The notes: generated from the sequence alone by a model not told the origin. Positions 11,741-46,900 are shown, numbered from the stretch's first letter. The stretch: 64,000 nucleotides of DNA from Phallusia mammillata (GCA_965637545.1 OZ281499.1:16182001-16246000); one strand, 5' to 3'. Made by a program: numbers and translations.

Positions 11741-11873
11741 CCAAGCGTGACTATAAGGCTCATTAGCTGAGTCTCATTGCTGCAGCATGCAAGCATAGTA
11801 GAGTATACTTATTTAAAGGCAGTTGTTGAAATATCGTTTGCACAAACTACGAAAGTTACCGTTGTAAACTATT

Positions 11874-19909: not shown

Positions 19910-22900
19910 ATGAAGACAAGCAATGTTTTGTGTCTGGTAACGGCACTTTTCATGAGTGCGAAAGGGTAAGTACTTGGTACCAAATGTGATCAAACTTAGA
20001 TGTGCTATGTGTTGTTTGCAAGTAACAGTTTGTTGAGAATTCACAACACAACCGAAAATATGTATAATACTCGTTCATTATCTCAAAACTATGTCATATA
20101 TGGTCTTAATTGGCTACGACATGTTTCTTAACGAAACGGTAGCATAAATACAGTGAATGAACGCAATGTTTGTCTTTACACATGAGAATACAACAAATCA
20201 ATTTTTGCCAATTATAATGTTTGAAGCGACGTGCTTGTGGTTTGCCGTCATTTGCTAATTGTCTGGCTGTGTGGCTTCTTTGATGTGGTATAGATCGCCC
20301 CTTTGTTGATATTGTGAAAAAATCCCTTGAGATTACAGGTATAGTGCATTGAAACATGAAAGTATCGACTGGTGCCATTGTTGTGTCACTTAAGCTCCAC
20401 ATCAATAAACATGCGGCTGATTTGTGTAGCTCAATGACACGCGCTTGCAGATTTTGCAACAAACTTGTAAGATAAGAACGGATTAAAAGCAAAGCTAGCT
20501 TCGGGCAATGGAGGCGCTCAAAGTCCCCGACTTGTAATTTTTATCCACTACAAGCACAAACAAATCGCCGCAGTTTGATTTTTATATTACACCTTTTTAG
20601 AATAATTTTAAAAATAAACAGAGAATACATTAAATTGCACGTTTTCCAATCTGACAAACACAACCCCAAAACAAGATGTATAACTACAAACACTGTTGAG
20701 ATGCATTATTCATAACAGTAGATATAATCAGCATGTACTCTAAGGGATTATGTTCATTATGATGTTCGTCTTGTACAGGGGTCACCAAACTACGGCCCGC
20801 GTGCCGGATCCGGCCCGCGACCACATTTTTTGGTTTGTCAAATCGCATTGATAACTTTGTAACATTTAAAAATTGATCTACTTCTTACGAAAGTTTTCCT
20901 GTCGCGATATTTAGAATTGATATTACCTTGTTTTATGGGATTACAACACCCAGGATTGACCCAAAGCCAGTTTGTTACGTCACAAACAAGACTAAAAGTG
21001 TTAATTGTGCGCAAACGATTGCTTTCTTTGGTCACTTGTGACGTATTATACAAGCGTTGCTTGTAAGATTAGACTAACTATGCAATTTAATAGTCGCATT
21101 ACCTGATTTTAATGAGATTATAGAAAGACCATATCTTGGCGCCCCTATCAAAATCGCCTTGCGGTCTAAGTTCGCAAAGACGGCGCTAGGGCATGTAAAC
21201 TATCCGGCCCGCACGAATTATTATTAAACTATTATTAAACTTATCCGGCCCGCAGTGAAAAAAGTTTGGTGACCCCTGGTCTTGTAGGTGATCCCAATTC
21301 CTTTCCAGAGCCATTACGACTCTTTCCGTTTCTTAGGGCAAGTTGTTCAACGGTTTCGCAAACTACTGCATTCCTATGAAATTGCCAGTTTCATATGGAG
21401 TTTTGTTAAAGGCGAAATATAGTGTAAACGCTAAATTATTTGATATGCGTACGAACCATAACGTCTCAATAATAAGGGTGGGAGTGATTTTGTCCCATAA
21501 TTTATTTGGAAATGGTTTACGTTGTTGCGACAGGATATTGGTTACAAATATTTTTTTAAATGTACAATTGTAACTACAATTTATTGCAATTGTAGTTGTG
21601 TTTTGTAAAAATGTGTCAAAAAAAGTTATTTCGCTTAATTTTTTTACGACCCGGCATAAACCTTTTAAAAGCCTTTCTCGCTTGTGGACATACGCTTTAA
21701 AATCCAAAGGCATTGGATTAGTAAAACCACCAGCACGCGTCTCCATCTAGTCCAGACATCAAAAAATCACAATAAACCTGATTTAAACCATTAAACGTAA
21801 TTCTGTATTTCATTTCAATTCGTTTCAATTCGAGGTCAAAAATAATCTAATTAGGCTATCTGTCTAAGTCAGCGGTTCTCAACCAGTGGGCCATGGCCCA
21901 CTGGTGGGCCATGGAAGCATTTTGATTGGGCCACAGACCAAAAAAAAATAGAAAGCATTTTTTAAGAATTTTCATTTGTGTCACTACACTCAATTTTACA
22001 AGAATAATGGCTTGGGGAGGAATTGAGAAGGAATGTAAATTAATTTGAATTATTCTATTTATGGTATGAAGTTACTTTGAGTTTCTGCAACCCCGTATGT
22101 TTATGATGTAATAAACTACTTTGTGATTACAATAAAGCCAGATAATAGCAGAATATCAATTGTCCAATTATTCAGTCATAACTGAAAGTGCTTGATTAAA
22201 GAAGGGAAAGTGCTGTTTTATGATTTTTTGCATTAACATATTTTGAGCTTATTATCTGTTTGAAATATGTCCTGTAGTTTTTTTTGTTCTGAACCTACTT
22301 TATAGTTGTTTCTTTCTTTCATAAAAATTTACTGGGCCACAGAATTTTTGTGCAATGAAAGTGGGCCACGAAAGAAAAAAGGTTGAGAACCACTGGTCTA
22401 AGTATTTGCGTTAAAAAAATGAAGTGGAAATTTTCCTGGCGTTAGCACACAACAACTAAAAAAACATGAATTCATATGTAGAAATCAGGTTTTAATGTGT
22501 TTTTTTTGTAGCCTCGATGTAGTTTTTGATCTCCCTGCCAAACTACGTCACGATACGACTCACAACGTCATCCTCACAACGTTCGATGCAGTGGTGGGCA
22601 GACATTTTACTGTCCGAATGTCAGTGCGAACGGATAGTGGCGTGATTTTTAACCAACAAGTAAGTCTGCTCAAATTTAGAGAGCTCTTCTGGCAATTGTC
22701 AGCCCGTTAATTGATTGTTTGGTTGTCTTCAAACTTCTGCGCTAAACATACCGTAGCACCCTGAAAGTGATTCTAGTCAAGTACGTACGTGATACACGTG
22801 GTGTTATAGCATTGATTACCTTAAGAAGCCATTTGCAGGTTAATGTCAAACACCATTCGTTTTGTTCACAGCGAAGTGTTATCGTGAGCAGTTCGGTCGA

Positions 22901-28900: not shown

Positions 28901-31900
28901 GACGCTGCAGCCGCTATCGAAGTATACGTTACCCCGTCACCTAGGCAACGAACAGTAAGCAAAATATATTACAGATTCTAGCAGTAAATGAAAAGCAGTA
29001 GAAATCTAAATAACCTGAAGATTTGTTTTGAAACGGAATTGTTTTGAAACGGAATTGTTTTGAAACGTTGTGCGTTTCGTTGCGAAGTTTGACGCCATTA
29101 CTGCTTGCATAATTGATTTGAATTTACACTAGAAAAGGAAATCACCTAATCGATTCGACCAAATTACAATTCGATTACTAGACAAACAAATTGCTTGAGG
29201 CAGCTTACATTGAATAAAATCTGCTGGTCGAAATCGTTTTCTGCGACTTAAATATTAAAGTTTTAAATATATATCAGCGTTCTTTTTAATACCTCTTTAA
29301 TGGATAGATAAATTGTCATTTGCTTGTTATAGGCAGAAACTATTAAAAAGTCCTTTATTTGCAGATTGTATACACTGTTACGGCAAAGGAGGACGTTTTA
29401 GTGGAGGGCAAGGTCGTCGTGTCTGCTAACGAAAATCAGGCGGTAATTCGTTTGCACGTGACCAGTCAAATGTCGCCACGCTCTCATATTACTGCGTATT
29501 ACGTCACACCGATCAGTTCAGGTTTGTACATTTGTCAGTTGATGGTTTTCTCCAACACTCATTGCGCTCCAGGCCTATTGAAGTTGTAATACTAAATTTA
29601 ACCGCCTTCCGAACCGAATTAAACCGAAATAAATGTCCTGCGCTGGGATTTGAATCCAAGACTGCTGGTCTGCAGCAGGACGGGCTGGTCCCAGTAATAA
29701 GTTTAAGTTTATCTCAGCTATTTTGTGCAATAAAGTGGTTTATGTTTTCCGTCAAAAGATATAACAAAAGCAAACGGCAAACGTTCAAATAGTGTTATCT
29801 TGCCAAAAGTTGCTCATTTTTCACAATACTGCCATGGTTTGTGAATGTAGGTAACGCTTTGCAGCACACATTAAATTTTTATCAGGAGGATCTTACATCA
29901 CTGCTGACTCTGCGGTGCTCCGTGTGGTGGAAACTTGTCAAGGAACAAATCCAGAACTGCAAATCAACTTTCCTGGGGACCTACTTCCTTATCCAGGCCA
30001 AGAGGTAAGAACTCCATTTTTTACATTGAAAGATGATAGTTGGTAGCATGCATAGAGCTGGGTGCATAACTTTTCCTGAAACGTAAAGCTTTTCATAAAT
30101 CTTTAGCAAACAAGTTTCAACGATTTTACTTTCAACATTTTGTAAACATATAATAAGGAGCGTATATATTTTTTGATCAACAAAACAATATAAATTAAAC
30201 GATTGTTTGGAACACTGTTCATACACGATCTGTTCATAAGTTTAATGACGAATATAACGGCCCAAATAGACGTAAAAACGACATGAAAAATTAACCTCGC
30301 GTGCCAACGTTTTTCTAAATAATAGTGGTTCGTGCCAGCAGATATCAGTAAACCAGAGTGTTTTGTGCACGTAAGGCTGAATTTTATAACAATGGCATGA
30401 TAAAAACTATAAACAAGCAGTGTAACGGGTTTAACTGTCACTTCAATATAAACACGCGAATCTGTTGGCGTGCCATGAAAAACCACCTCGCGTGCCAAGG
30501 TTGGCACGCGTGCCAGGGTTGCCGATCTCTGTAATAAAGTATGTCGCTTTTTACGTCTATTTGGGCCGTTATAGTCATGATTAAATTTAAACAATTATAT
30601 TTTGTCTTTTGTTGATATTTAAATGTGACAGAGCTGATCAAATCATTCTAATGGTCCATATACCCAAGCAATATTTTTCTGTTGAGTATTAAAATAAACG
30701 AGCTTACTGCAACCTACCACAAAGAAACCTACTATCTCTTAAGCTTGAAATCGGTGTCAGAGGTCATCCATCGGCTTATGTCGGCCTCACTGGTGTCGAT
30801 GTCGCTGCTCTGTCGCTGAGGAAAGATTTCTTGGGTGAAAACGAGAGTTCTTCGTCCAACTCGAGGTCAAACACCTTTAACATCCTCCGCTCATTTTCCC
30901 TGGAATGCAAATCCCTGTCTATTCCATCACCACAGTATGCGTTTAATGCCGTCGGTAAGTGTTAATTTATGGCTGCCAATAAATAAGTTTTTTTAAGTAA
31001 GTATTTGGAATTCTACGCCAGTCCCATTGAAGGCACCATACCGCATCAGCCGACAACCAAGTATTTACCAGCATATGGCAAGGCGTAGGCTGGAAAAATC
31101 TAGCCTGCGGTGGGACTCGAACCCACTCCTGTTGTGGGTTCGAATACTGTGATTTAAAAATTAGTGGGCCGTGATCGCTGGTTTGCATAGACGATTCAGG
31201 GCTGATCCCAGTTATGAATTTATGTTCATATTATTTGGAATTCTATTTTAGCTCATAGTACATAGTTATCATCAAATTGAGAATACCGTACAGTGCAGTA
31301 ATACAATTACTGCAGGTCGAACTCTTGCCTCCTCCGTCACCAATGGCGTCATCGATGCGAGCAGTTCAACGTGTGGTGATGTCACTGCGAAACGTCGAAG
31401 AAAAAGAGATTTGTTTGGAGATTCTCAGATGATGATACAAAAAGGTAAGAATGGCGTCACAAAGTGTGCTAAGTAACGTCACATTTAAGTAATTGCGATG
31501 ACGTCATTGAAAAAAGTGAATTGTTTTCAGTTTTTTAACGTCATATTAATTTATATCGGCATGTGGCAAAACCCATAACAACCACCTAGTGACGTAGGAG
31601 TAACAATGCAAGACAAAATAATATTTCTATGTCCACAACTTATTTTTGTGTAGCCGAAAGATACTATGGAAGTGTTTACGAATGTTGCGAGATCGGCTCG
31701 TTGGACGTATCAAGCGTTGTGAATATACCGAGCGGCGAAAACTATTGTGAAGAACGCAGGCGGTCCTTGTCTCTGACAGAAGAATGTGAAAAAGCATTTA
31801 TGTCGTGTTGTAAAGAGGCTCAGTGTCGAAGACAAAACACCAATAATGTGGAAAGATGTGTATCTGAGTAAGTCATTTTTATATGTCATTCAAATCTGTA

Positions 31901-34900
31901 TCTAAAAATAGACAAAAAGTAATACTGCTGTATGTAAATTTGACCAATAATAGAAGTTCTTAGAAGGCTTTCGAAAAAATAATTGCTGCTGTTTTTTAAA
32001 ATACCTAAATAACTTCTTTGAATAAAAAAGTATGTAATTTGAAGTATGTACCTGTGCCTTTAAACTTTACACAATGACGTGTTGGTTTGTGCAGTGACAT
32101 CAGGGCCAGGGGAGTTTTTCTCGTCCCGGGGTCAAACAGGGTCGGAACCCCGATCGAAGTGCAGAGAACTGAACCGTGGTTACGAAGAGATTTTGATGAA
32201 ACCTGGTTTTCTGTTGACTTCAGACTTGGGTGAGTTAAAATCGTTTCAAGGGTTGAATTGAATGTGTTTTTGTCAAGTGCGAGTACCGGAAAAACTCCTG
32301 TCCAGGGTTCGAATCCCACCACAGTCTAGATTTTTCTAGCCTACGCCTTGCCATATGGGAATGCTTGGTGACAGGCTAATTCTTTATCATTCATTCAATG
32401 GGCCAGGTGTACTGTGATCTACATTTGAGTATGGCGTGATTGCTGGTCAATAGACGCTTCAGGGCTGACACCAGTTATGAATTTAGGTTCAACTTAACTG
32501 ATTATCGACTTGTTATTAACCTAAAATGGGCTGTGCAACTCTTATCACTGATTGGTTATATATATGTGATATACAATTAACATATTTAGACGGCGGGGCA
32601 CACCTTCATATATTTCAAAATATCATTAGGCCTGCCTTGTTGAGTAACAAACACGCTTACATTGAGTTAACAACATCTAGTAAAATTTGCAATTGATTCT
32701 AAGCGCATTGTTTGGTTGCAGGAAAAAAGCCCCGGGCGCATTAATTTGCTTAAACAACAAAATATGAAATGGTATTCCTCCCTTTCACGCGAACTAAAAT
32801 GGTTTAGCTGGCCATATAGTATTTAAAATCCAAATGTCTCCGCGGGCCACACAACCTTTGCTCAAGCAGCATCAGGCCCGCCCGTCGCAGGTTGCCTGTT
32901 GCTGAAAGATTTTAGAAGGGAAACACTTTTTCACCTTCTTGCCTCTTTAACGACATGGTGCACTTTGAAGTAAATGTGATAATATGAAATACCAAAACAA
33001 CTTAACTACTCATGCCAGGGGGAAAAAAATGGAAGTCTCGAATAAAAAAACGAGAAATTTTCATTAATTTTCTTTTTAACTCCTGTTGTTGTTTAATTTG
33101 TAGATCAAGAGGTTATACAACTCTGAACGGAACAAGCAGCCCAAGGATTCCACCACTTCCACATAGCATCACCTCGTGGTCGGTTGGTCTGTTTAGTTTG
33201 TCCCCGGTAGGTGGCGTAGCAGATCCAGATATGTTTCGTATTGCAAGATATACACTGATTTAAAATAAGTCCTTAAAGAAGGCTATACTGATTTTGAGCC
33301 GAGCCTCGACATTTTCAAACACTTTGATTTCCAGTAAAGTGTACAAAAATCGTATTTTGAAACTGTCAAGTCTGTTACGCACAAAGTTGTACTTTTTATC
33401 GGACTTTTTGTTCCTTTTTTTATAATTAGGACCCATTTCTGTCATATTTAATTAGCCTTAATTTGCACGAATATGTATGCTTACAACCAACAAGGTATGT
33501 ATATATATATGCTGCGTTTATTCCGTAGATCCTCATGTAGGCCTACGAAAATAATTTATTCTTGAAACTTATAACTTTAGTTGTACTTGTTACAGGAGAA
33601 CGGTATGTGTGTGATGGACCCATTTGTATTCAACGTCGAACATGCAATATTTATGGAGGTTTCTATACCAACTCGGCCTGTAGTGAGAGGAACAAAAGTT
33701 TCGGTGGAAGTTACAGTGTTTAGCTATATCGAAAGCAGAGTTACTGTAAGTATTAAATTATTTTGCAGCAAAGTTGGTATTGAGGATTTTTAATGTGATT
33801 TTTATGAACTAAATGATATTATAAAACACAGGATAGCTACAGTGGGTCCATATGACATAAAGGACACACAAGTTGTTTAAAATTTTGAAAACCTTACATA
33901 AGCAAAACTATAGGAGGTCAAATGGTTAATTGACTGGAAACGCTTGACCTTTTATTAGACATTAAACTAAATACCCCAATCGGGATACGTTTATGGTAGC
34001 GTAATGGGTTTAAATTTGACCAAAAAATAAACAAGGCATTTTGACTTCAGGCGACAATCGACATCGAGTCAACAGAAGGACTTTGCGGGAGTAAAACACC
34101 CGGAAGCTCGCCGGAAAATATAAACATTAACCCTTCCTCGGGCGGCATCCCCTCCTCTGAATTCCTTCGCTTTACTGTTATACCAGTTATAACCGGAGAT
34201 CTAAAAGTCAAGGTAAAACACTTATACAAAAAATCAAATGTTGAACCAAAATTCACAGCGTGTTTTGTCATTTAATCTCGTAGGTACAAACATTTTTACT
34301 GTGAAAGTCATCTAAAATATGTCTATGTGCTATTGGTCAATCTGTTATAAAAAATAACGCAGTGTATTCTACAATATGGGTTTTATTCTCAACGTTAAGT
34401 CGTATACATTGCCAAAGTTTGGTAATTAAAACTTTAAAATGGCCAAACTACTGGTAATTAAAACTTTAAAATGGCCAAACTACTGGTAATTAAAACTTTA
34501 AAATGGAACCTCTCAATCCATTGCTTGGGGTGAAACCCAATGATTCTTTTGAAATTATAGGATATTCAATATATGAAGGTACTCCAAAAAACGTTTATTC
34601 CAAAATCCTAAGCACAGATGGTTTTTTGTGAACTGAAAACTATCATTTAAATATATGCTACACTGCCCTTGTTTTCCAGGTTATTTTAAAAAAGAGACAG
34701 CACGGTGAAAGAAAACCATCGTTTGTGGACAAAGTTGTAAAAGTTCTTCAAGTGATTCCGGAGGGCGAGAAACAGCGAAAGGTCGAGTGGATACTGGTGG
34801 ACACGAAAACGACAAGAAAACGCAGACAACGACCTTCTTCTTCGACTACCACTAGAACTAATAAGAAAATTAAACTTGGGTTTCCATCGAACGCTATACC

Positions 34901-37900
34901 AGGAACGGAAAAGGTAAGGTTTTATTAATTACAGGTACCATTTTGCATCCGAGTTGTTTTTTACTTGATCAGAGTTTTATTGATTCTCAAATCGAGCGAA
35001 ACCTAAAAAATGTTAGCTTTTTTATTAGCAGATATTTTTTTAAAATGTTGCTTATAACATTTCATACTATGTTATAATACAGCTTTCTATGTTATAACAC
35101 AGAATTCTTTGGATTACTTATTTTTGTTTTAGCTCAAAAGTCAGTAAGTGTACAGCATAACCTATAAAAACGTTACTGCTGTAAAGCAATATATCGTGTC
35201 CAACTTGTGACTTTTTAGGCTACTATGCATTTGCACGGAGTCAGTTCAGCTGCCACTAAAAGTCCGACACCAAACGACGATGATGCAACGATTGCGCCGT
35301 ATTTGTATTCACTGCAATCCGCCTCTGTTAAGTAAGTATTCCTCATAAATACTCCTTATACAAGGGAGAACTAAACGATAAAATTTGGGTGGAACATAGG
35401 GGGTTACAGAAAATAATGTAACTCTTAATTTGAAAACAGGCTTTGCTGGGACCTTCTCAAATTCCATGTAACAAAACTAACTTAGTTATAAAGACTAGAC
35501 TAACTTTGCTTGATTGCTTTAAGCCTACTTTTACAACTCATGCCCATATACTCAAATGCAAATCCGATTTGTAGATTGGAGTATCTTCGACGTAACAACT
35601 TGCTCAATGGTCGCAACGCAAAGATTGACAGTTTAACGACCGAAGCTCAGAATGCTTATGAGGGATTGCTTTCGTTTATGCACGATCGAAACGCCGACAA
35701 ACCATTCACAGGTAAAAAAAATAACAAGTTTATTTTAGCATTTTGTGCCAAAACTTGTGGATTACTGATTGCGTAAATAATTCAAATTTACCCACAAGTT
35801 AGTTGTCAAAAGTTGATCCTCCCAAAGTTTGACCCAGAGGGTACCCATCATGGTAGTAAGTCAAATGGTCTGTATAGTTAGTTGGTAAATATAATATATA
35901 AAATGGAAATATGTGGAAAGACCACCTTTCTAGTTATATTTATTTTTTGCACTTGGTGACCACTAATTAGTTTAACGTTTTTGTCTTTCTTTGTTGGTTA
36001 AAACCAAGCTGAACGGGATTGGAACTCATAACAGAGCACTTGCGCTAACCACTCGACTATCTTGAAAATAATTCCTTCCATATGCTTTGTAATTTACTAA
36101 ACTTGCAGTAAAATTGTTACGTTTTTTTTGCAGCACAGCCCAGACCGCCACTGATTGGATTCTCATTCTCACCAACTCGGGCTTCGAAACCGGATTTATG
36201 GCTTACTAGCGTCACCTTGCGGTTGCTGGTGGAAACAGCGCAGTTAATCAACCCAGACCAAGTAAAATATTTTTGTTAGTAGTTTGTAGCCGAGTTGTAA
36301 GCTCGCCCGAAATTCGAGCCAGCACCCGAAAGTATAAGCCCGAAGCGAATGTGACAGCCCGTTTAAGCCCAGAAGTTTGATTAACATGGCAACTTAACAG
36401 TGTACAAAAGTACAAGTGTACAGAATGTAACAATAGACATTGGATTTAACACGACTCCTAGGGCTGTATGACATTGGGATAAGTCCAACTAGCCACTTAA
36501 CTGGGTAATTTTTTTATAATTACGGACACAAGTCCGTTCGATGAAAAAAGCCCAAACTCAGCTCAAATCCGACCCGAAAATCCTAGCCTGAGTTACAACT
36601 CTAGCTTGTATGACAAACATATCTAGAAGGTAGCTTCAGACGATATAGTTAAAAACAATTATAATTTCAATTTTACGTTTTAATGGAATATGCCAGAAAC
36701 ATCAAACTGTTTTAAACAAGCTACGGTTTGGGATTTAGTATGCATCAGCGATTAATATATTTGCCTGTATTTTGACGGTCTTGTTTATTTCGAAAAATCT
36801 TATCTTTTTCTAGAACATTCTGACTGGTTCTTTGAACTACGTTATGTCACATCAAGTAAAATTGCGTCGCTCTCTCTACTACGCAGGGTCGCCAGTGGCA
36901 ACTTCACGCAGACGAAGATCTGCTTGCAGCGATATCACGTAAAATACAATTGCAAATATTAGCACTGTTGGACTCACATTTTAATTGCATACAACACACA
37001 TTCTAAACTAAAACTATTTTGCCCCAAAAAGAATAGTAAAAAGCAGTTTGAAGCAATGTAATTACCTTTCATAGTTCTTTTTTTAGCACGGCTGTGGTGA
37101 TAACGAATTCTCTGTGTTTTGTGATAATGGACGGTATCATTATCCTTTGCTATGTTTTGATACGCAGGCAAAAATCGGATCGTAAAATTTGCCGACAACG
37201 CAGAAGAATTTCCAAGAGAAATTTGCGGCTTCCAAATTTCAATGAACCTTTGGATCGAAAGGTGCAGGAATGTTAATCTTGTGTATCAAATACTATTTCA
37301 TTTGAGAATTTTTAGTAATTTAGGTTTTCGTAAAAAATGTTTTAGTTGTACTTTACTGTAAAAAACATAATGGACAAAACCCACACTTACAAGTAAACGT
37401 TTAGCAATACAGACACTTGTTGTTTGTGAGCATCTAATGGCCAAGCCAGACCATCATATAATAAAAAAACAAATATGCTTGGATAGTGTTTTTTATTATT
37501 CTGGTTTAAAGCCACAAATACAATTTAGAATAAGAACGTTTTTGAATTTTTATAACCAAAAATTTGCAACGACGCTGTACGAAATAATTCCTAGGTTAAA
37601 ATGCATACATAACTTCGTTTACAATGTGAAAAAACATAGTTTTTTTGTCATACTCGTTATACTGTGCTTATACTGTATTATACTTGTGGCAGTTGTGTTT
37701 AGAGGGGATGTATCTTTACGTTTAAGATTTTGCGACCTTTTAGAGATCTCTTTCGCTTTGCCAAACTTTGTATTGTTTGACAGATTTACAGAACTTCCGT
37801 AATAACATCAGAATTGGACGCGGTTCGTAAAGCGTACACTGATTGGTCAAGCGGAACAAGACAACCAATCAGCACTGACAACGAAATCGACAGGTAATGT

Positions 37901-40900
37901 CTCGAAAAGTTTGTTATTTTGTCTATTGTGTTTTAATCAACTTCCATTGTGTTTTTAATCAAACTCGTGCCTAAATCAATAACTATTTGTTCGTGCTAAG
38001 GTTGCAGGCTTGGTCTTTGTAGACGTAGGCTAAATACCTTTTCGTGAAATTAAAACTAACTCTACTAAATCCTACATTTTAAATTTCCTTCATAATTGTA
38101 GTAATGGCAATACAAAACATATATACGGACCTAATTTCAGGTTTATGACTCTGGCATTTTTGTACAGCTGATTCTTATGAACGATGTAATGCAATAAACA
38201 TTTATGTAATCCCTCTTCTCGTCTTTTAACATTTAAGTATTTACCTCAATGTTTTGGCAGGGAAAAGCGAGTACTTAAGCTTAACGACAGAGCAGTAAGA
38301 ACTTCTCTTCGCTTGGGAAACTCCTTTATCGCCTACCACCTCAGAAGGGTAAGTATTGTTAGCAAATGTAGTAACAGTAGCAAATTCGTACTTTACCCCT
38401 TTCAATAAAGAAATCTACTAACACCATAACTCACGGCAGCCGCATTTAGCTAAATTTCGATAGGTGACGCAAAGAGCACAAAAACCTATTTAAAACAGTA
38501 TATTTCAAAAAATCTGACGGTTAGGGCTATTAGGGTTGGGGTAAGGCATTGCCATTAGAAATTCAATACAACTAACTTGAAAATTAGGTTCCTAATGCAA
38601 AAGTTTCAAAAACTTGCTTCACCCTAACCCTTTTTTAGCCGCTAAATTAACAATTCATTATTGCGCAACCTATCGAAATTTAAGGTCCGCCGTGAGGTGT
38701 TAATATAGCTTTATTTGTAATAAATCTCTTTATCTTACAGATCCATAGCACAACTGCAAGTCCAATCACCTTAACAGCGGCAGCACTCGCTACTTTTCGT
38801 ACGTCGGGGAGCAGCTCCCGTATTCTTCCCACACTTGATCGAACCATACTCACTTTCCGGCAAACTGAAACTTTCGATTCGGTGGTCACGTGGTACATTA
38901 ACGTGAGTGCAAACTTTTTCAGCATTATGCGCTTCAGTAAATTCTCTTCGGAGTCTGATTAGTAAGTTGTTATATAGGCAGTGGTGAGATTCAGCCGGTT
39001 CGCACCGGTTCTATAGAACCGTCTCATGAAATGTTATGAAATCAGCGAACCGGATAGCATTACTGGTTACTGTTGATGGACTTTTTGTAACAGAACCGGC
39101 TGAAAATATGACTTTTGTGATAGAACCGACTGAAAAAAAAAAAAATGAATCCCACCTCTGTAGTGGGTCGTTAGCACTTGTGATCCCAATAGCTTGTATG
39201 TAAATGCCACAAGTAGTAAGCTGAAAAATACTGATACTTGATGATATAATTCTGGATGATTGATTTCAAGCGTCTAAGATAATTTTGCATACACTTTAAT
39301 GTAGCTGCAAACTAAAATGATGAGAATTTTTTTCTGTTACAAATTTAGTTGTTAATGTGTGTTATTTCGTATACGAACGTAATTATAAACTAAGAATTAA
39401 TACAGACGAATCTGGTTAAGAGCATCACCATTTTGTCAAGCGTTTTTATGCAATTATCCGGATTATGCGATAATTTGGACGATTTTCCTAACAAATATCT
39501 TCAGTTAGGATTAACGATCTATATGCATCAGGTAAACAGATTGAGAATGGGGTCTATGCTTTGGAAATTAGTCATGCATACGTATTGCAAAAATTAAATA
39601 AATTAATTGGGGTTATTTTGTGTTAACGTTCAGTCGAACGGAAGGAGTACAGCGGCTGGAAGTTTAACAGCCAAGCAGGAAATACAGATGGCGTCCGCTA
39701 CAGTCGAAGCTACCGCATACCAACTACAACTAACTGCGTTAAGAGGTGGCCGAGTCGGTAAAACGTTTGTGTATTGACTTTACAAATGCCTAACTGGAAG
39801 TGTAACTTAGTAACATACTTTACCAATATCGAATGTAAAAATGGCGATTTTATGTTTTCCTGATTTGTAGACATTTCCTCTTTTCAAAGGCTAATTTGAA
39901 AATGCGAAGAAACTTATCTGGGGCACGTTTTTATCTCATATTAAGTTGTAAATTCTTTTTTTTCCCCCGCGACTGCTCAATTTAGATGTACTTATTACTT
40001 TGTGCTTTTAAAGTGTGTTTCAAAATTGAAAATTGTTACAGAATTATGCTACACATCTTTGGCTGGCATAGGCCTTTAATACACACTTAGATTTAAACAA
40101 GAATCACACGTTGCTGTATCGTTTATAAGGTTTTTCAAGTGAGAAGTATGCAAACTGGTTGTTTAAAAAACGAGATGCGAACAACCACTGGGTGACGCTG
40201 CGGGACGGTATAGCAGCAATGCAAGCACTAGGCGCTTACGTGGCAAGAAATACTGTGGCCAGTCCACTCCGTGTTGAAGTAAGAACATATTTAATTTTTG
40301 ATATTATATTTCCTTATAGTAGTTTTGTTGCAAGTACATCTATATTTTTTGACAAACTCAGTTTTGTATTTACTTTTAAATTTTATTGAAACAAGTTTAA
40401 AGTAAAATATTAAGTTTTTAGTTTGACAAAACATTGTATTTATTTTTAAATCGAATTAAAACAAATTTGCATTAGAAAATAAAGGTTGTTTATCAGTTTT
40501 GACATATCTGTATTCTTTACAGACGTTTTGTTTAACCATCAGTATTTAATTTGTGTAAACTGTAAGTAACATTTGTTATTAGTATTGTCCACTTAATATT
40601 GACAGATAAAGACAAAAAATACCAAGCATTGCGTCTAAAAATAATACTTTTGCAGCTTGAAAATCCAGAAAGTTCTGCGCCAGTGGTCATCAATCCTGAC
40701 CACGTCGAACGCCAGGGGGCGACCGAGAGTCGTGTTTCGCTTCCTGTCACAAACAACGAGGTTTCCATGACAACTGTTGGCCGTGGACAAGCCTGGTTAG
40801 AGGTAACTACCCACTTTATATTTTTCCTTAACATCTTATTATTTGCCGTCTTTAGTTCTTTAGGTCGTTAAAACGTGTTTAGACCAGTGGTTGTCAAATT

Positions 40901-43900
40901 TTGCGCCAACGTCCACCTGGTGTCATTAGCAATCGTAAATAGTAGAGGTGAACTTATCCGAATTGTGCAGGGCACCTAAAAACTTCATTGGGATTCGTCT
41001 TTGGGTGCGTCGTGGGTTCGAACTCCGTGAAAAAATTGAAATGGGCTAAAGGGGCAGGGGAAAAATCGTTTGGAAAATATATCTTTAAACGTACAATCTA
41101 TGTTATTTGCGTAAATGTTTTTACCATATAAGATACTTTTTGCTTGAAACTCTGAACTGATAATCTGGCATTATTGTCCGTAAAAATATTTAAGTTTTGT
41201 TAGGAAAGGGGAATTTTTAATTCAACTATCCTGTTTAGGGTTCGGTATAAAACTATTTAAAAATTAAGCGGTCCAGAAAAAGAGTGAGAACCACGTGTTT
41301 AAATAAACACTTTTATTTACATTCCTGCTAATTATGTCTTTAAACTATTCAGCTACACCCAAAATATTTTTTATATTTGGTTACATTTCATTTAGCTCCT
41401 ACCTTTCATAGGGTCGGAAAATCTGCCTAGAGTATTTTGCCAGACATAAAATGTTTACCAAACGTGGTTTAAATGTTTAAATAATGTCACATATTTTGTA
41501 GCTTGACATGGAATACAACGTTGCAACGCCTAACGTAAGGTCAGCCGGACGACCTTCAACATTTTCATCTGTTGACTCCAGTGATTCTTTTCAGTCTGTG
41601 GTCAGTGTTTGCCCGTACGATCTGTCAGTCGAAGCCCAGAATATTCCACCACTGGCTGAATGTAAGTTAAAAAATCAATGCTGGTTTATTTAAGTTGCTA
41701 GCAGATGCTTCCAGGTTTTACTTGTTAAGGAGATTTATTACTAAAAACTGTTTGGCCTACAGGAGGAATAGTATCAATTAAAGCCTTTTTTCGGAATAGA
41801 TGTAATTCTCAGATCCTAATTTGATAAAACTAAAGCATACACCTGTTTTTGTTATTTATTTCCTCACAGAATAGCTCACAAAATTAGATAGGAATCAAAT
41901 AAAAGTCATTTACAAATCGGTGGTAAAATATTATTATTCTTCAGTATTGGTTTAAGTTAAACTTTTTTTTGCAGTTTCATCTGTGGGGACAGCCAGGTTG
42001 AGATCATCGCAAGCTCGGATAAGTAAAAGTCTTTACGTTCTCGATGTTAACGTGAGTTACATAAACCCAACTACAAGTGAAGAGGATGGGATAAGCACTT
42101 ATGTAGTGGACGTGGGCTTGGGATCCGGTGTCGAACCTTTCCTTGATGACCTTGAAATGGTAAGTTTCGATCAGTTAGTAACAAAGATAAAGATTTATTT
42201 TGCTGATCACATCTTGTATCTTTGCATTTCTTTGTATTGGTTGGTGTAGCCATCTAACGGCACTCCAGTTTGTTGGGAGTAACGTGTTGAAAAGCCCTGT
42301 TTCACCAATTCTGTTGACTGACACAACTAAGCATAAACCACAAGGGAAACTGGGCAAAAACAACCAGCTACACTGATGAGACCTTATAGGTCGAAACAGT
42401 GTGCACTGTCTGCGGCTTACTTATCATTTATTGGTTTAATAATTATTTATGTTGTATTTCTTTGTATTGTTCGCTCGAAGAGTAAAATAGAATGATTAAC
42501 GAATAAATGAAACAAGCATTTATAGCTTGGATAATTGGCAATTTACATAGCACACACGAATAGTAATCACCACAAGCAAAATAGTAATGAATGCGGTACA
42601 ATTAACGAATCACGTGACTGTGGAATGCGCGTACGCGATTACTGCCTGAAGGACAGTACATGAAGCGGAACCACAACACCTCCCCTTCGAAGATCAGAAT
42701 CCCCCCTCAGATTAGAAGTGAAATCGCTCGGGAGGTTTACGCGACCTCTTAGTTCGTCGTGGATTGTCGGGACCGAATGAAGGAGAGCTACGATTCAGTG
42801 GCATGTCTGAATCTGCACCAGCAGTAGGAGCCTGCGGAATACTTTCTTCCGCTCCCGGTTCCAAATCCTCGTCGGACGCGTATCGAGCGCGTAGTTGGTC
42901 GATATGACGTCTCCAATTTGGACCACGTGGAAGAACTTTAACATGAAATGTACGACTTCCACACAGTTTAATAATCGTGGCAGGAACCCAGCGAGCATCC
43001 TCGGTACGTCTTGGACCAAGATACAAAGCGTAACATGGGTCTCCAATGTTGAAAGAAGTGATGTTCACGGGTTTTCGTGTTGCTTGCACTTGCTTACGTT
43101 GCATCAGGTGTGCTGGCGAAGGCAACAGAGTATCTATTTTCGCCCGAATTTGTCTGCCGTTAAGTAGTTCACTTGGTGAAAATCCACTGGCGTTTGGAAT
43201 ACGCCTGTATTGCAGTAGAAACTCTTGCAACGCCTCTTTAGGAGGTTTAGAAGACTTCTTAAGTGCCTTTTTGAAAGTTTGCACTAATCGTTCTGCAGCG
43301 CCATTTGTAGCAGGAAAGTACGGAGCTCCGGTCAGATGAACGATGCCCCTTTGTTTACAGAAGTCTTGAAATTCGGCAGACATAAAAGCTTGCGCATTGT
43401 CGGAAACAATAGTATGAGGGTAACCGAAATGGGCAAAATCTTGTTCCAACAACTCCATAGTTGTTCTCGATGACATAGATTGCGTTTGGTGTATACACGG
43501 GTATTTTGAGTGAGCATCTATCATCACAAGCCAGTTACTTCCCAGAAAGTTAACTGCGTGATCGATGTGTAAGCGACTCCATGGCTTTTCCGGCATCATC
43601 CATGGATGTACAGGTGCCTTTGGCGGAGCGTTTTGATGTTCAGCACAAGTCTGGCACTTGTGGCAAAGAACAGTAATGTCGTCATCGATATTTGGCCAAT
43701 AGACTGCAGTTCTTGCCAGTTGCTTCATTCGTTGAATCCCAAAATGTCCTTGATGAAGGATCTGAAGAACAGCAGAACAAAGTGATTCCGGTATAACCAA
43801 CCGTGAACCATACAGTAGACACCCATAACTGGTGCTCAACGAATCCATAACCTTGCGAAACTTTGCAACTGGATCGTTGTATGCAATAGTAGATGGCCAA

Positions 43901-46900
43901 CCTTCTCTCGTAAAACGCATGACTTTGGATAAGGTTGGATCTTTTCCACTTTCCTTTCGTAGTAACGCTGAATCGGTGGGTTGCACTTGTAAACTAAGAC
44001 TGGTAATTGCACAAACAGTGTCGGTGTCATGTGCACTTTCCTCCCTGTCGAAGTCAGCATCCTCACCAACTGGTAACCGACTGAGTGCATCGGCATTTTG
44101 ATGTTGCGATGTCTTTCGATATTCAATGGCGTATTGAAATTGGCCAAGAAAAAGTGCCCACCTTGCTAAGCGATTTGCAGCTAGAGCAGGCGTAGCTTTA
44201 TTAGGACAGAATAATGCCAGCAGTGGCTTGTGGTCTGTCAGTAGAATAAATTTCCTACCATATATATATTGGTAGAATTTCTTCAGCGCAAAGATTATAG
44301 CGAGAGCCTCTTTCTGAATTTGGCTGTAGTTGCGCTGGCTTTTAGTTAGTGATTTGGATACGTTGGCAATTGGTCTCTCGCTTCCATCTTGATAGCGGTG
44401 AAACAAAACTGCTCCAATTCCAACATTTGATGCATCGCAGGAAATGCCAATAGGTAAAGTAGGGTCAAAATGTGTCAGAACTGTATCAGCTGACAGCAAT
44501 TCTTTCATTTTGCAAAATGCAGCTTGCTCGTTAGGACCCCATTCCCATGCAATGTTTGACCGGGTAAGTCTGTACAGTGGTTCTGCAACGCTGGAAAATT
44601 GTGATGGCAGAAACTTGCTGTAGAATTGAACGGAACCAAGGAAAGAACGTAAGTTTGAGACATCTTTTGGTGATGACATATTAATAACGGCATCCACCTT
44701 AGAACCTTTGGAAATGCCATCTTTTGACAAAATATGACCCAAGTATTCCACTTGAGGTAACGCAAATTTACATTTTTCCAAACGACAGCGTAGACCTTTG
44801 TCGTTAAGCCGTTGAAGAAGTTGGCGAAGATTGTAAACATGCTCTTCAGCCGTTGATCCGCTAACTAAAAGATCATCGAGATAAACTGTAACACCTTGTA
44901 GATCGCTTGTAATCTCTTCCATGATTGATTGAAAATAACCAGGAGCAGATGTTATACCGAATGGTAAAACATTTTGCAGTAGCACCCCACGGTGTGTACT
45001 AATAGCTAGTCGCTTTCGGCTCTCTGGTCCCAACCGGATTTGGTTGTAGGCATCAGCTAAATCAATCTTTGTAAAACCGTAACCACCACGCAACTTGCGC
45101 ATCAAGTCTTCTGGAAGAGGAAGTGGATGGCGGTGTGTAGATAACTGCGGGTTAACTGTTACAGAATAGTCTCCGCAAACTCGTATCTTGGCTTTACTTT
45201 GTGCGGGAAGTGGTGTCTTTCGTATAGGAACTACTGGAGTCCCCCACTCGTTAAATTTTGCCGGAGTCCAAATACCTTTTGCGATGCCAGCATCGTATGC
45301 TTGATTGACGTCATCCTGTAGAGCAAATGGAACAGGCCTTGGCTTGCAGAAAACAGGCTTTACGTCTTTGGTGAATTTTACTTCCAGTGCAAAATCCTTC
45401 AAACACCCCAAATCTTCCTTGAAAAGGTCTGGATATTCCTCGCAAAGCTTTTTGCAAGCACGTTGTAATGATGCGTCTGCTTGGTTGCTGGCGTCAGATA
45501 ATACGTTTACCTTATCGTCGGTACGATAAAGTAACTTGTCCAATGATATGCGCAACGCCTCGATTCCACATCGACCAAGTAAATTTAAATGCGGCATTTC
45601 GGAAACAAACATCGTAAGACTACATGTTGTTGTCCTATGTTTGACTTCAGCTTCGAATGCGCCCAGTATCGGCACCAGATGTTCCGTTGCAGAGTTGAAA
45701 CGCTGATTGGTTTCCTTCAAACTCGGTTTCCCAATTTTCTTCCAGAAATTTACAGAAATAAAATTTCCGCTTGTTGCTGTGTCAATCTCTAACAGACAAG
45801 CTTTACCGTTTATGTTGACGGTTACCTCGAGTTTTGGACTAATATCTGCTTCTGGCTTCATCGAAAGTAGCGAATTTACATGTTGAACTGGCAAAACAGA
45901 CGCTTGTTTCTTTCTGCAAACAATTTCCAAATGGCCTATACGTTTACAGAATTTGCAAGTGGCTCTTTTATAACGGCAATCGGGTGCCAGGTGATCAGGT
46001 TTTCCACATCGGTAACAAGTTGTATTCTTTCTAAACTTGTCAATTGTAGGTGTGGACGTATTGAAACCTTTCTTTGCATCCCGTACCTTGTGTACCGATC
46101 CGCGAGTTCCATACACGGTTTCCTTTGCAACCTTTGCAGCGTCTTCGGTTTGCATTGCAACTTCAATAGCACGTGTAAATGTCAACTCATCGGCGTTGAT
46201 TTTGAAGATTGCCTTTAGCACTGCTTCGTTACCTATAGAGCAAATGAACCTTGTACGCAACGCTTCGTCCAGCGGGTCTTTAATTGAAGGAAAATCGCAC
46301 GTGCCTGCGTCGTGACGAATGCGTGCAGCTAACTCTTGCACTGTTTCCCCGGGCTTGCGTTGCATGTTGCTCCAAAACTTAAAGCGTTCCCGTATAACAA
46401 ACCTTTTCGGATCGAACTGTTCCTTCATGAAACCTTCAATTTCTTTGATTGAAAGATCGTTCACAGTCTTGACTGGAGAGCTTTGACCAGCCAGATTGGA
46501 TAGAAGCTTGTACGTCACAGGGGTTTGATTGGTGAGAAAAACTTGAGCCATCCTCGTTTCTGGTACAGCATGTGCTTGTATAAACGTTGTAAACCTCGAC
46601 CAGTAGTCGTCCCACAGCTCCGATGTTGAGTCGAATGAGGCAAAGCTTGGCGTAGCAACGGAAGGTGCAGCGTTTTGACTGGAACCGGCTTTCTCAACTA
46701 AGGCGAGAATTAGCTTCATTTGTTCATCGTGGCGTCTTTGCTGCTCTTGTAGTTGTTCTTGCATCAGCTTTGCAATTTTCTCCATCTTCGAAAGAACTAT
46801 CTTCGATACCAAACTGCGTACAACGTGTTCAGTTGGTAGATCCCGTCCTCGTCGCCAATTAACTCTGTTGTATTTCTTTGTATTGTTCGCTCGAAGAGTA

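What the first reader, a model, noticed from the sequence alone, without database searches (positions are those of the whole stretch)
34680..38348. Four extra furin-type sites in CUB/TED and a long insertion that could be excised from the TED
Seen in sequence: besides the beta/alpha KRRRKR (31390-31407) there are TT-RKRR-QR (34815-34826), TS-RRRR-SA (36907-36918, right after the lost His position), IC-RQRRR-IS (37193-37207) and ID-REKR-VL (split across 37892-38270). Relative to human C3, roughly 70 extra residues sit between the FVLISLQEAKDIC-like helix (here YVLIRRQKSDRKIC) and the GSITKAGDFL-like helix (here TSLRLGNSFI), bracketed by RQRRR and REKR. Established: R-X-K/R-R is the furin consensus; in C4 and three-chain C3s the extra alpha/gamma site lies after the TED, not inside it; factor I makes its third cut in C3 in the CUB-g segment, roughly where RKRR sits here. 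Inference: the protein may be pre-cut into up to six pieces, releasing a defined peptide (ISKRNLRLPNF...STDNEID). The degenerate TED may have been repurposed as a propeptide carrier.
Basis: partly seen in the sequence, partly recalled or inferred. Interest (0 to 1): 0.75.

Follow-up and report, generated by a model that had tools for sequence, protein, structure and literature searches.

The report
Conserved polybasic insert in ascidian C3-like
A sea-squirt complement C3-like protein that has lost its thioester carries, in the loop that normally holds the catalytic histidine, a small arginine-rich, cysteine-containing insert. Three distant ascidian lineages keep it, and it probably adds one furin-type cut inside the domain, not the four cuts and released peptide first proposed.

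Summary
All four R-X-K/R-R motifs are at the stated coordinates and are in the mRNA: spliced contigs from four studies cover them. One exon start is wrong.

The gene is the orthologue of Ciona "complement C3-like" (XP_026692819) and Clavelina XP_076820306. None of the three has GCGEQ.

Conservation across the three lineages (about 40% identical to each other):
- **Site 2** (SRRRR|S-x-C) is kept, with synonymous codon changes.
- **Site 3** (C-R-[KQ]-R-x-R) is kept.
- **Site 1** is only loosely basic in the relatives.
- **Site 4** (REKR) is not conserved.

Sites 2 and 3 bracket a 24-46 residue cationic insert with 2-4 cysteines, placed just before the catalytic-His loop. Fourteen canonical TEP/C3 proteins lack it. 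In Ciona and Clavelina part of it is a 72-nt mini-exon.

AlphaFold models of the two orthologues put site 2 in a low-confidence coil and site 3 in a confident helix.

Best reading: a conserved insert whose N-terminal tetra-arginine is a likely extra convertase site. No cleavage has been shown.

The parts
19910..19965 (+). Putative exon 1: signal peptide MKTSNVLCLVTALFMSAK(G)
   Evidence: ATG, a hydrophobic core and a GTAAGT donor in the phase that joins exon 2 at 22511. It matches the N-termini of the Ciona and Clavelina orthologues...NG|LD.VF.LP. Inferred only: no RNA was laid here.
31390..31407 (+). Beta/alpha processing motif KRRRKR
   Evidence: Codons read. tblastn places this exon on the stretch of the Ciona and Clavelina proteins that holds their beta/alpha sites RKKR (702) and RQRR (701).
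34680..34913 (+). Exon for the end of MG7 and CUBg; holds site 1, RKRR, at 34815-34826
   Evidence: Exon limits come from RNA contigs. The motif is only loosely conserved: Ciona RIQRR/RIQKR, Clavelina GRTRNR. It lies in a short insertion relative to human C5, in the loop where C3 has its third factor I site (plus established knowledge).
35219..35331 (+). TED exon at the thioester position; no GCGEQ
   Evidence: RNA joints. The alignment with 14 TEPs shows 'HGVSSAATKSPTPNDDD' where GCGEQ should be.
36814..36938 (+). TED exon ending in site 2 (SRRRR|SAC): RRRR at 36907-36918, Cys1 at 36925-36927
   Evidence: RNA joints. The motif is conserved in Clavelina (SRRRR|SSC) and Ciona (KRKRRKR|SSSC), with synonymous codon differences. 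The orthologous residues lie in coil with pLDDT below 50-55.
37087..37167 (+).
   Evidence: Joint 36938 to 37168 in X7, X11, X17 and X18, with zero depth over this stretch. It has no counterpart in the orthologues.
37168..37261 (+). TED exon: Cys3 (37190-37192), site 3 RQRRR (37193-37207), KR (37214-37219), then the conserved LRLPNF..LDRK, which is the catalytic-His-loop equivalent
   Evidence: RNA joints. C-R-[KQ]-R-x-R is conserved in all three lineages. The orthologous residues lie in a predicted helix, pLDDT 72-89.
37784..37893 (+). TED exon: canonical core helix IYRTSVITSELDAV (37784-37825), followed by a variable loop
   Evidence: RNA joints. The helix aligns with the LTAFVLISL helix of canonical TEPs. 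YRTSV is invariant in the three lineages.
37892..38270 (+). Site 4, REKR, split by the intron (37892-37893 | 38261-38270)
   Evidence: Present in the mRNA. Not conserved: Ciona NGNP, Clavelina AENR.
38261..40278 (+). Remaining TED exons: 38261-38348, 38741-38902, 39634-39757 (alternative donor at 39745), 40130-40278
   Evidence: RNA joints. They are homologous to the C-terminal TED helices of TEPs.

Best explanation
The window holds an expressed ascidian orthologue of the thioester-less 'complement C3-like' gene of Ciona and Clavelina. It is probably the 'third C3 gene' of Hibino and Nonaka 2013.

Its TED keeps the alpha/alpha-barrel fold. Just before the loop that carries the catalytic histidine in canonical proteins, it has gained a lineage-conserved insert. 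The insert has four parts:
1. A disordered linker ending in a tetrabasic motif, S-R-R-R-R|S-x-C (site 2).
2. A variable cationic segment of 11-29 residues held by one or two disulfides. Cys1-Cys3 and Cys2-Cys4 pairing is inferred, because the window species lacks both Cys2 and Cys4.
3. A second basic cluster, C-R-[KQ]-R-x-R (site 3).
4. The conserved L-[RK]-L-P-[NQ]-F..L-[DE]-R-K-[IV]-Y-R-T-S-V core that follows.

Because the protein enters the secretory pathway, the exposed site 2 is most likely cut by a furin-type convertase, as the beta/alpha site is. That would split the alpha chain inside the TED, giving a three-chain molecule held together by the fold. Site 3 may stay uncut as a basic, disulfide-stapled helix. 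If it is also cut, a 20-46 residue connecting peptide is released.

Sites 1 and 4 are species-specific basic motifs of uncertain use.

Shown: the motifs, their presence in the mRNA, the exon structure, conservation, position of the insert and predicted disorder or helix. Inferred: secretion, cleavage, disulfide pairing and function.
For: - RNA contigs from four studies contain all the exons and motifs.
- Orthologues P0008 (Ciona) and P0010 (Clavelina) were found with the MG7 exon. They are 40-43% identical to the window and to each other in CUBg/TED.
- Site 2 and site 3 are aligned and kept in all three lineages, together with the adjacent cysteines.
- Arg codons at site 2 differ synonymously: CGC AGA CGA AGA in the window, AGA AGA AGA CGA in Clavelina.
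- In the whole 1,868-residue Ciona protein, the only strict R-X-[KR]-R clusters are the beta/alpha site and these two.
- The insert is absent from 14 canonical TEP/C3 proteins.
- It is partly encoded by a conserved 72-nt phase-symmetric mini-exon in Ciona and Clavelina.
- Two independent AlphaFold models put site 2 in coil at pLDDT below 50-55 and keep a TED fold. Foldseek hits are C3, C4, C5 and CD109, with TM-score by target 0.61-0.64 to C3d and C4dg.
- The TED and the insert are as conserved as the rest of the protein: 41% and 49% against 36-47%.
- Signal-peptide-like N-termini are present in both orthologues and in a putative exon 1 of the window.
Against: - There is no protein-level evidence of any cleavage.
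- Only three lineages could be sampled. A search for TED-sized fragments found nothing.
- Structure predictions are for the orthologues, not the window protein, and the alignment is only 3-4 sequences deep over the insert.
- Site 3 is predicted helical and lies between cysteines, which argues against a second cut.
- In the window species the segment between the two sites is barely cationic, so a 'functional cationic peptide' is not conserved.
- A polybasic patch could work by binding rather than by being cut.
- (AGA)n runs at the distal cluster in Ciona and Clavelina could partly reflect slippage.
Confidence: 0.55

Rival explanations
1. The insert is a conserved cationic binding element and is not a cleavage cassette. 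A disulfide-stapled basic helix, or helical hairpin, sits on the face of the TED that once carried the thioester. It binds anionic targets such as glycosaminoglycans, microbial surfaces or another protein, replacing covalent attachment. The R-X-K/R-R strings are a by-product of the high arginine content.
For: - Both AlphaFold models make the site 3 region a confident helix, pLDDT 72-89.
- The insert carries 24 K+R in 46 residues in Ciona and 16 in 42 in Clavelina.
- It sits at the His loop next to the former thioester.
- KKWQK.C is conserved between Ciona and Clavelina.
Against: - In the window species the insert is cut down to 24 residues with 9 K+R, and its core is nearly neutral. The flanking basic motifs and cysteines persist, which is the pattern expected of cleavage boundaries.
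- An exposed RRRR|S in a secreted protein is hard to keep uncut.
- Site 2 lies in predicted coil, not in the helix.
Confidence: 0.28
2. Four extra furin sites pre-cut the protein into up to six pieces and release ISKRNLRLPNF...STDNEID. The degenerate TED serves as a propeptide carrier.
For: All four motifs are real and are in the mRNA. They are strongly enriched in CUBg/TED.
Against: - Site 4 is absent from both relatives and site 1 is only loosely basic there.
- The proposed peptide contains the invariant YRTSV core helix of the barrel.
- The helix used to define the '70-residue insertion' is intron.
- The TED is under the same constraint as the rest of the protein.
Confidence: 0.05
3. Neutral drift. 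The thioester-less TED is relaxed, arginine-rich and prone to AGA/AAG codon slippage, and the motifs are chance products with no function.
For: - Arginine makes up 10-12% of the TED against 6-7% elsewhere.
- (AGA)5 encodes the RRRRR of Clavelina.
- Sites 1 and 4 are not conserved.
Against: - Sites 2 and 3 and their flanking cysteines are kept in three lineages at about 40% overall identity, with synonymous codon turnover.
- The insert is 49% identical between Ciona and Clavelina, above the protein average.
- A dedicated mini-exon of identical length and phase is kept in two lineages.
Confidence: 0.07

Closest known systems
Ciona 'complement C3-like' (XP_026692819, XP_078493245/6) and Clavelina lepadiformis XP_076820306; probably the 'novel third C3 gene' of Hibino and Nonaka, Invert Surv J 2013, 10:29-37 (cited in PMC5465252)
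   Same: Orthologous gene with the same MG/ANATO/TED/C345C layout. It also lacks GCGEQ and has the same polybasic, cysteine-bearing insert in the TED.
   Different: The window species lacks the 72-nt mini-exon, and with it Cys2 and Cys4, and it has its own extra motifs (sites 1 and 4). I could not read the 2013 paper, so I do not know whether it describes the insert. The identification of that paper's gene with this one is an inference.
Tetrabasic linkers of C3/C4/C5 precursors: the beta/alpha RRRR of human C3 and the alpha/gamma RRRR of C4; the alpha/gamma site of three-chain invertebrate C3s (for example Pinctada RVGR 1438-1441, PMC8089394)
   Same: The same type of motif (S-R-R-R-R|S) in a secreted protein of the same family. 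It is expected to be cut by furin-type convertases in the Golgi.
   Different: Known sites lie between domains (after MG6) or in MG8 after the TED. This one lies inside the TED barrel, in the catalytic-His loop, and is paired with a second basic cluster and cysteines.
Vertebrate C5 and other thioester-less C3 paralogues (for example razor-clam ScoC3-like-3, PMC8960428)
   Same: Loss of the thioester with ANATO, beta/alpha site and C345C retained. MG7/CUBg scores slightly higher against human C5 than against C3 in the PDB.
   Different: C5 and ScoC3-like-3 are not reported to have a basic insert or an extra convertase motif in the TED. The ascidian clade is only 21-23% identical to any other TEP found.
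C4 isotypic region and the catalytic-His loop of C3/C4 TEDs
   Same: The same loop of the TED, the one that tunes thioester reactivity in C4A and C4B (established knowledge). The insert sits immediately before its equivalent.
   Different: Here there is no thioester to tune, and the loop has been expanded by 24-46 residues.
Third factor I site of human C3 (Arg-Glu in CUBg, which generates C3c + C3dg)
   Different: It is a furin-type motif, not a factor I site, and it is not conserved in Clavelina.

Membership tests
Complement C3/C4/C5 family (TEP superfamily) | MG/A2M domains, TED, A2M_recep | tested here: met
   Pfam A2M matched the window exon 33581-33790. Precomputed Pfam domains MG2, MG3, MG4, A2M_BRD, A2M, TED_complement and A2M_recep are listed for the orthologues. 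tblastn shows the window collinear with them from 22513 to 49866. The TED fold was confirmed by Foldseek.
Complement C3/C4/C5 family (TEP superfamily) | Anaphylatoxin (ANATO) domain and C-terminal C345C/NTR domain | tested here: met
   ANATO scores 27.2 bits (cut-off 21.4) in the Ciona orthologue and 17.6 bits on the window exon, below the cut-off. NTR (PF01759) is listed for the orthologues. The window aligns to that part at 48272-49866.
Complement C3/C4/C5 family (TEP superfamily) | Tetrabasic beta/alpha processing site | tested here: met
   KRRRKR at 31390-31407. tblastn places this exon on the stretch of the orthologues that holds RKKR (Ciona 702) and RQRR (Clavelina 701).
Thioester-active C3/C4 type | GCGEQ thioester motif and catalytic histidine | tested here: not met
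   No GC[GA]EQ in the window TED, P0008 or P0010, while 12 of the 14 canonical TEPs aligned beside them have it. The His-loop equivalent reads LPNF or LPQF.
Furin / proprotein-convertase substrate site | R-X-K/R-R motif with a permissive P1' residue | tested here: met
   Site 1 RKRR|Q, site 2 RRRR|S, site 3 RQRR|R, site 4 REKR|V.
Furin / proprotein-convertase substrate site | The protein travels the secretory pathway | tested here: inconclusive
   Signal-peptide-like N-termini are seen in both orthologues, and a putative exon 1 in the window. No signal-peptide predictor was available and no RNA was laid on exon 1.
Furin / proprotein-convertase substrate site | The motif lies in an exposed, flexible segment | tested here: inconclusive
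   Site 2: coil with pLDDT below 50-55 in both orthologue models, which meets the feature. Site 3: helix with pLDDT 72-89, which does not. Sites 1 and 4 were not assessable. The models are predictions for orthologues.
Furin / proprotein-convertase substrate site | Conservation of the motif in orthologues | tested here: inconclusive
   Sites 2 and 3 are conserved in three lineages. Site 1 is partly conserved and site 4 is not.
Furin / proprotein-convertase substrate site | Cleavage observed at the site | not testable with these tools
   This needs protein chemistry or proteomics.
C4-type three-chain molecules (alpha/gamma site) | The extra basic site is located after the TED, in MG8 | tested here: not met
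   The conserved extra sites lie inside the TED. The MG8 region of the window (about 42010-42162) has no R-X-[KR]-R. Ciona has RQARR there and Clavelina has nothing.

The most novel reading that the evidence does not exclude
Both conserved basic clusters are cut. A thioester-less C3 paralogue would then act as a precursor that releases a small disulfide-closed peptide from inside its TED: 20-46 residues, strongly cationic in Ciona and Clavelina. That would be a second bioactive fragment besides the anaphylatoxin, with a host-defence or developmental signalling role, encoded in part by its own mini-exon.
Probability: 0.15. Interest if true: 0.8.

Novelty: new variant of a known kind. Interest (0 to 1): 0.5.

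Why it matters
C3-family proteins are processed at one or two well-known interdomain sites. A conserved convertase-type motif and a cysteine-stapled basic insert inside the thioester domain, at the loop that normally holds the catalytic histidine, would be a new way of remodelling this domain after the thioester is lost.

It gives a concrete, testable handle on what the enigmatic 'third C3' of ascidians does. A review cites the 2013 paper as finding that gene transcribed during early development (the paper's title places it in the endoderm) and calls it probably not a typical C3 (PMC5465252). The question becomes whether it is a three-chain molecule, a surface-binding opsonin without covalent attachment, or a peptide precursor.

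The case also shows that two of the four motifs flagged by eye are lineage noise, and that one 'helix' was intron.

Tried and rejected
- **Pfam on single TED exons and on the insert:** no family found.
- **PDB sequence search with the CUBg exon alone:** blank.
- **Representative-library search with the MG7 exon:** only 9 hits, and the window's own protein is not in the library.
- **Word-indexed searches:** the profile search found no further member of this clade beyond Ciona and Clavelina; the next TEPs are 21-23% identical. A search for TED-sized fragments found nothing. Stolidobranch or thaliacean orthologues therefore could not be tested.
- **Spliced window protein:** it could not be handed to the structure or search tools, because no reference exists for a spliced product. 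The orthologues were folded instead.
- **Synteny:** the MFS transporter next to the Ciona and Clavelina genes gave no tblastx match in the window.
- **Hibino and Nonaka 2013:** not in the paper library, and searches for 'CiC3-3' were uninformative.
- **The 81-nt stretch at 37087-37167:** I considered that it is a relic of the mini-exon after intron loss. The lengths (34 against 24 codons) and the sequences do not match convincingly, so this is left open.
- **Simple AGA-repeat expansion as the source of the motifs:** rejected for site 2, where codons are mixed in the window. It remains possible for the distal cluster.


Full report
**1. Observation**

The stretch 34680-38348 lies in a large multi-exon gene on the + strand. 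A putative exon 1 is at 19910 and the last exons are near 49866. The gene encodes a C3/C4/C5-type protein.

Reading the sequence confirms all four motifs:
- RKRR at 34815-34826
- RRRR at 36907-36918
- RQRRR at 37193-37207
- REKR split across 37892-37893 and 38261-38270

The beta/alpha KRRRKR is at 31390-31407.

Runs of organism A that hold about a fifth of the sampled words of the stretch were found in several studies. Their assembled contigs, laid on 34500-40450, are spliced with GT..AG joints, so they derive from RNA.

The exons they define are:
- 34680-34913
- 35219-35331
- 35575-35711
- 36134-36261
- 36814-36938
- 37168-37261
- 37784-37893
- 38261-38348
- 38741-38902
- 39634-39757 (alternative donor at 39745 in one run)
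- 40130-40278

All four motifs are in the mRNA.

One exon start is wrong, however. The acceptor is 37168 in all four studies, and depth over 37087-37167 is zero.

**2. More than chance?**

In the 488 residues from 34680 to 40278 there are four separate R-X-[KR]-R clusters. Residue shuffling gives 0.76 on average, and four or more in 0.46% of shuffles. Arginine makes up 10.2% of these residues. In about 1,400 aligned residues of the rest of the gene there is only one cluster, the beta/alpha site.

**3. Identity of the gene**

A library-wide phmmer search with the MG7 exon returned P0008 and little else. P0008 is named 'complement C3-like isoform X2 [Ciona intestinalis]' (XP_026692819). A word search with its TED found P0010, 'complement C3-like [Clavelina lepadiformis]' (XP_076820306). 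The cluster also holds a second Ciona species version, XP_078493245/6.

A profile of the two proteins finds no other close relative. The next TEPs are 21-23% identical. None of the three ascidian proteins has GCGEQ, while 12 of the 14 canonical TEPs aligned with them do.

In CUBg/TED the three lineages are about equally distant: window-Ciona 42%, window-Clavelina 43%, Ciona-Clavelina 40%. That would fit these distances, but I did not check it.

The tunicate immunity review PMC5465252 cites Hibino and Nonaka 2013 for a third Ciona C3 gene. The review says it is transcribed during early development, and the cited title places that expression in the endoderm. [quoted passage not shown] That is very likely this gene, but the paper is not in the library.

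**4. Conservation of the four sites**

| Site | Window | Clavelina | Ciona | Verdict |
|---|---|---|---|---|
| 2 | VATSRRRR\|SAC | PPPSRRRR\|SSC | SKRKRRKR\|SSSC | conserved |
| 3 | KIC-RQRRR-ISKRN | KMC-RKRRR-AC-SRRRRRN | KKC-RKRLR-KC-RRRKRN | conserved |
| 1 | TTRKRRQR | SGRTRNR | TTRIQRRG / TTRIQKRG (two Ciona forms) | loosely basic only |
| 4 | DREKRV | AENRL | NGNPL | not conserved |

At site 2, the four arginines are encoded CGC AGA CGA AGA in the window and AGA AGA AGA CGA in Clavelina. The amino acids are kept through synonymous change.

Site 3 is followed in all three lineages by the conserved L-[RK]-L-P-[NQ]-F...L-[DE]-R-K-[IV]-Y-R-T-S-V.

In the whole 1,868-residue Ciona protein, the only strict R-X-[KR]-R clusters are the beta/alpha site and the equivalents of sites 2 and 3.

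**5. Where the insert really is**

MAFFT with 14 canonical TEP/C3 proteins places the basic, cysteine-bearing segment as an insertion. It falls between the 'DGxFxE' turn and the 'PVIHxEMxGG' catalytic-His loop.
- LRLPNFNEPLDRK is the His-loop equivalent.
- IYRTSVITSELDAV is the LTAFVLISL helix.
- A second, poorly conserved insertion of about 20-25 residues follows that helix and holds REKR.

HMMER against CD109 structures agrees that about 90 extra residues lie in this part of the Clavelina TED.

The conserved insertion is the 24 residues (window), 42 (Clavelina) or 46 (Ciona) that begin after site 2 and run through the site 3 cluster. It contains 2, 4 and 4 cysteines and 9, 16 and 24 K+R respectively.

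In Clavelina (L001) and Ciona (L002) the middle of the insert is a separate 72-nt exon of identical length and phase. The window transcripts have no such exon. They lack Cys2, which the mini-exon encodes, and also Cys4. This paired loss suggests Cys1-Cys3 and Cys2-Cys4 disulfides. That is an inference.

**6. Structure**

The spliced window protein has no reference, so I folded the orthologues using alignments that include the window exons.

*Clavelina 975-1500* (mean pLDDT 70.8):
- RRRR (model residues 231-234) lies in the segment 221-240, where pLDDT is below 50.
- The site 3 region (264-277) lies within a long helix at pLDDT 72-84.

*Ciona 1040-1475* (mean pLDDT 78.3, pTM 0.79):
- The basic run (model residues 164-170) is in coil at pLDDT about 55.
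- Two insert helices follow, 173-185 and 194-222. The second covers C-RKRLRK-C-RRRKR at pLDDT 70-89.
- The canonical helix is 230-262, at pLDDT 75-95.

Foldseek matches the Clavelina model to CD109, C3, C4 and C5 TEDs, with TM-score by target of 0.61-0.64 to C3d and C4dg. The alpha/alpha barrel is therefore retained.

The TED is as conserved as the rest of the protein. Between Ciona and Clavelina it is 41% identical, the insert is 49%, and other regions are 36-47%. Between the two Ciona forms the TED is 96.7% identical against 94.5-97.3% elsewhere. 'Degenerate' applies to the thioester chemistry only.

**7. Mechanism**

Both orthologues start with signal-peptide-like sequences. The window has a matching putative exon 1 (MKTSNVLCLVTALFMSAKG, with a GTAAGT donor in the right phase).

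The tetra-arginine at site 2 is followed by Ser, sits in a flexible linker of a secreted protein, and is conserved as strictly as the accepted beta/alpha site of the same proteins. It is most simply read as an additional proprotein-convertase site.

A cut there would split the alpha chain inside the TED. The two halves would stay together through the barrel fold, because all the insert cysteines lie downstream of the cut.

Site 3 is less likely to be cut, since it is predicted helical and lies between cysteines. If it is cut, a 20-46 residue disulfide-closed connecting peptide is removed.

In favour of the cleavage reading:
- The flanking motifs and cysteines are conserved.
- The intervening sequence varies greatly in length and charge.

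In favour of a pure binding-patch reading:
- The helix is predicted with confidence.
- The Ciona and Clavelina inserts are extremely cationic.

I put about 0.55 on a conserved insert with a used convertase site at its N-terminal boundary. I put about 0.28 on an uncut cationic binding element.

**8.

- The alpha/gamma site of three-chain C3s does lie after the TED. In Pinctada the thioester is at 1006-1010 and RVGR at 1438-1441 (PMC8089394).
- Site 1 does fall in the CUBg loop that corresponds to the region of the third factor I cut of C3. The Ciona RIQRR lies in a 7-residue insertion relative to human C5, at 'TL-DPRGIYG'. The C3 correspondence rests on established knowledge of the C3 sequence.
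- The statement that RRRR lies 'right after the lost His position' is not supported by the alignment, which puts the His loop after the insert. This part of the alignment is uncertain, however.

**9. Novelty and verdict**

The gene family, thioester loss in C3 paralogues, and probably this Ciona gene itself are all known. I did not find an intra-TED, lineage-conserved polybasic and cysteine-bearing insert with a likely convertase site described in the papers available to me. The key 2013 paper could not be read.

I class it as a new variant of a known kind. It is of moderate interest and entirely untested at the protein level.

Noticed in passing
window 38878-39275 (intron): A short repeat inside the intron collects very high summed contig depth in all four transcriptome runs (hundreds to thousands against 7-72 for the exons). 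Many contigs run on into unrelated sequence. It looks like an abundant, transcribed MITE-like element.
   Followed up: no
window 39745 / 39757: Alternative donor. One study's contig (X11) uses 39745 instead of 39757, removing 12 nt (GGRV) in frame from a TED loop.
   Followed up: partly
window about 42500-47100: A GC-richer block (0.42-0.44 against 0.36) sits inside an intron of the gene. It is bounded by identical 126-nt stretches, read as a 42-codon ORF, at 42535-42660 and 46951-47076, and looks like an LTR-type transposon insertion.
   Followed up: no
L001 10608-10679 and L002 about 11829-11905: Ciona and Clavelina share a 72-nt phase-symmetric mini-exon that encodes the middle of the TED insert (S/K-rich, Cys2, KKWQK). 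The window species has no such exon in its transcripts. Skipping it would keep the frame, so alternative use is possible, but the listed Ciona isoforms do not differ there.
   Followed up: partly
window 37087-37167: An 81-nt open, in-frame stretch lies directly upstream of the real acceptor and is preceded by its own AG. It could be a minor alternative acceptor or a relic of an older exon. Contigs cannot show rare isoforms.
   Followed up: partly
window 37819-37852 and 38833: One study's contig (X18) differs at 37819, 37822, 37849, 37851, 37852 and 38833, within the variable loop after the core helix. No differences were seen at any of the four basic motifs in the four runs.
   Followed up: no
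window 11868-13121: A 418-codon uninterrupted ORF on the + strand lies upstream of the C3-like gene (it starts TIMNDDCATYNES...). It was not examined.
   Followed up: no
P0001 (MetaClust, 1325 aa): An old Ciona gene model of the same locus repeats the MG6-ANATO-MG7 part twice and stops before the TED. It is probably an assembly or model artefact rather than a real duplication.
   Followed up: no
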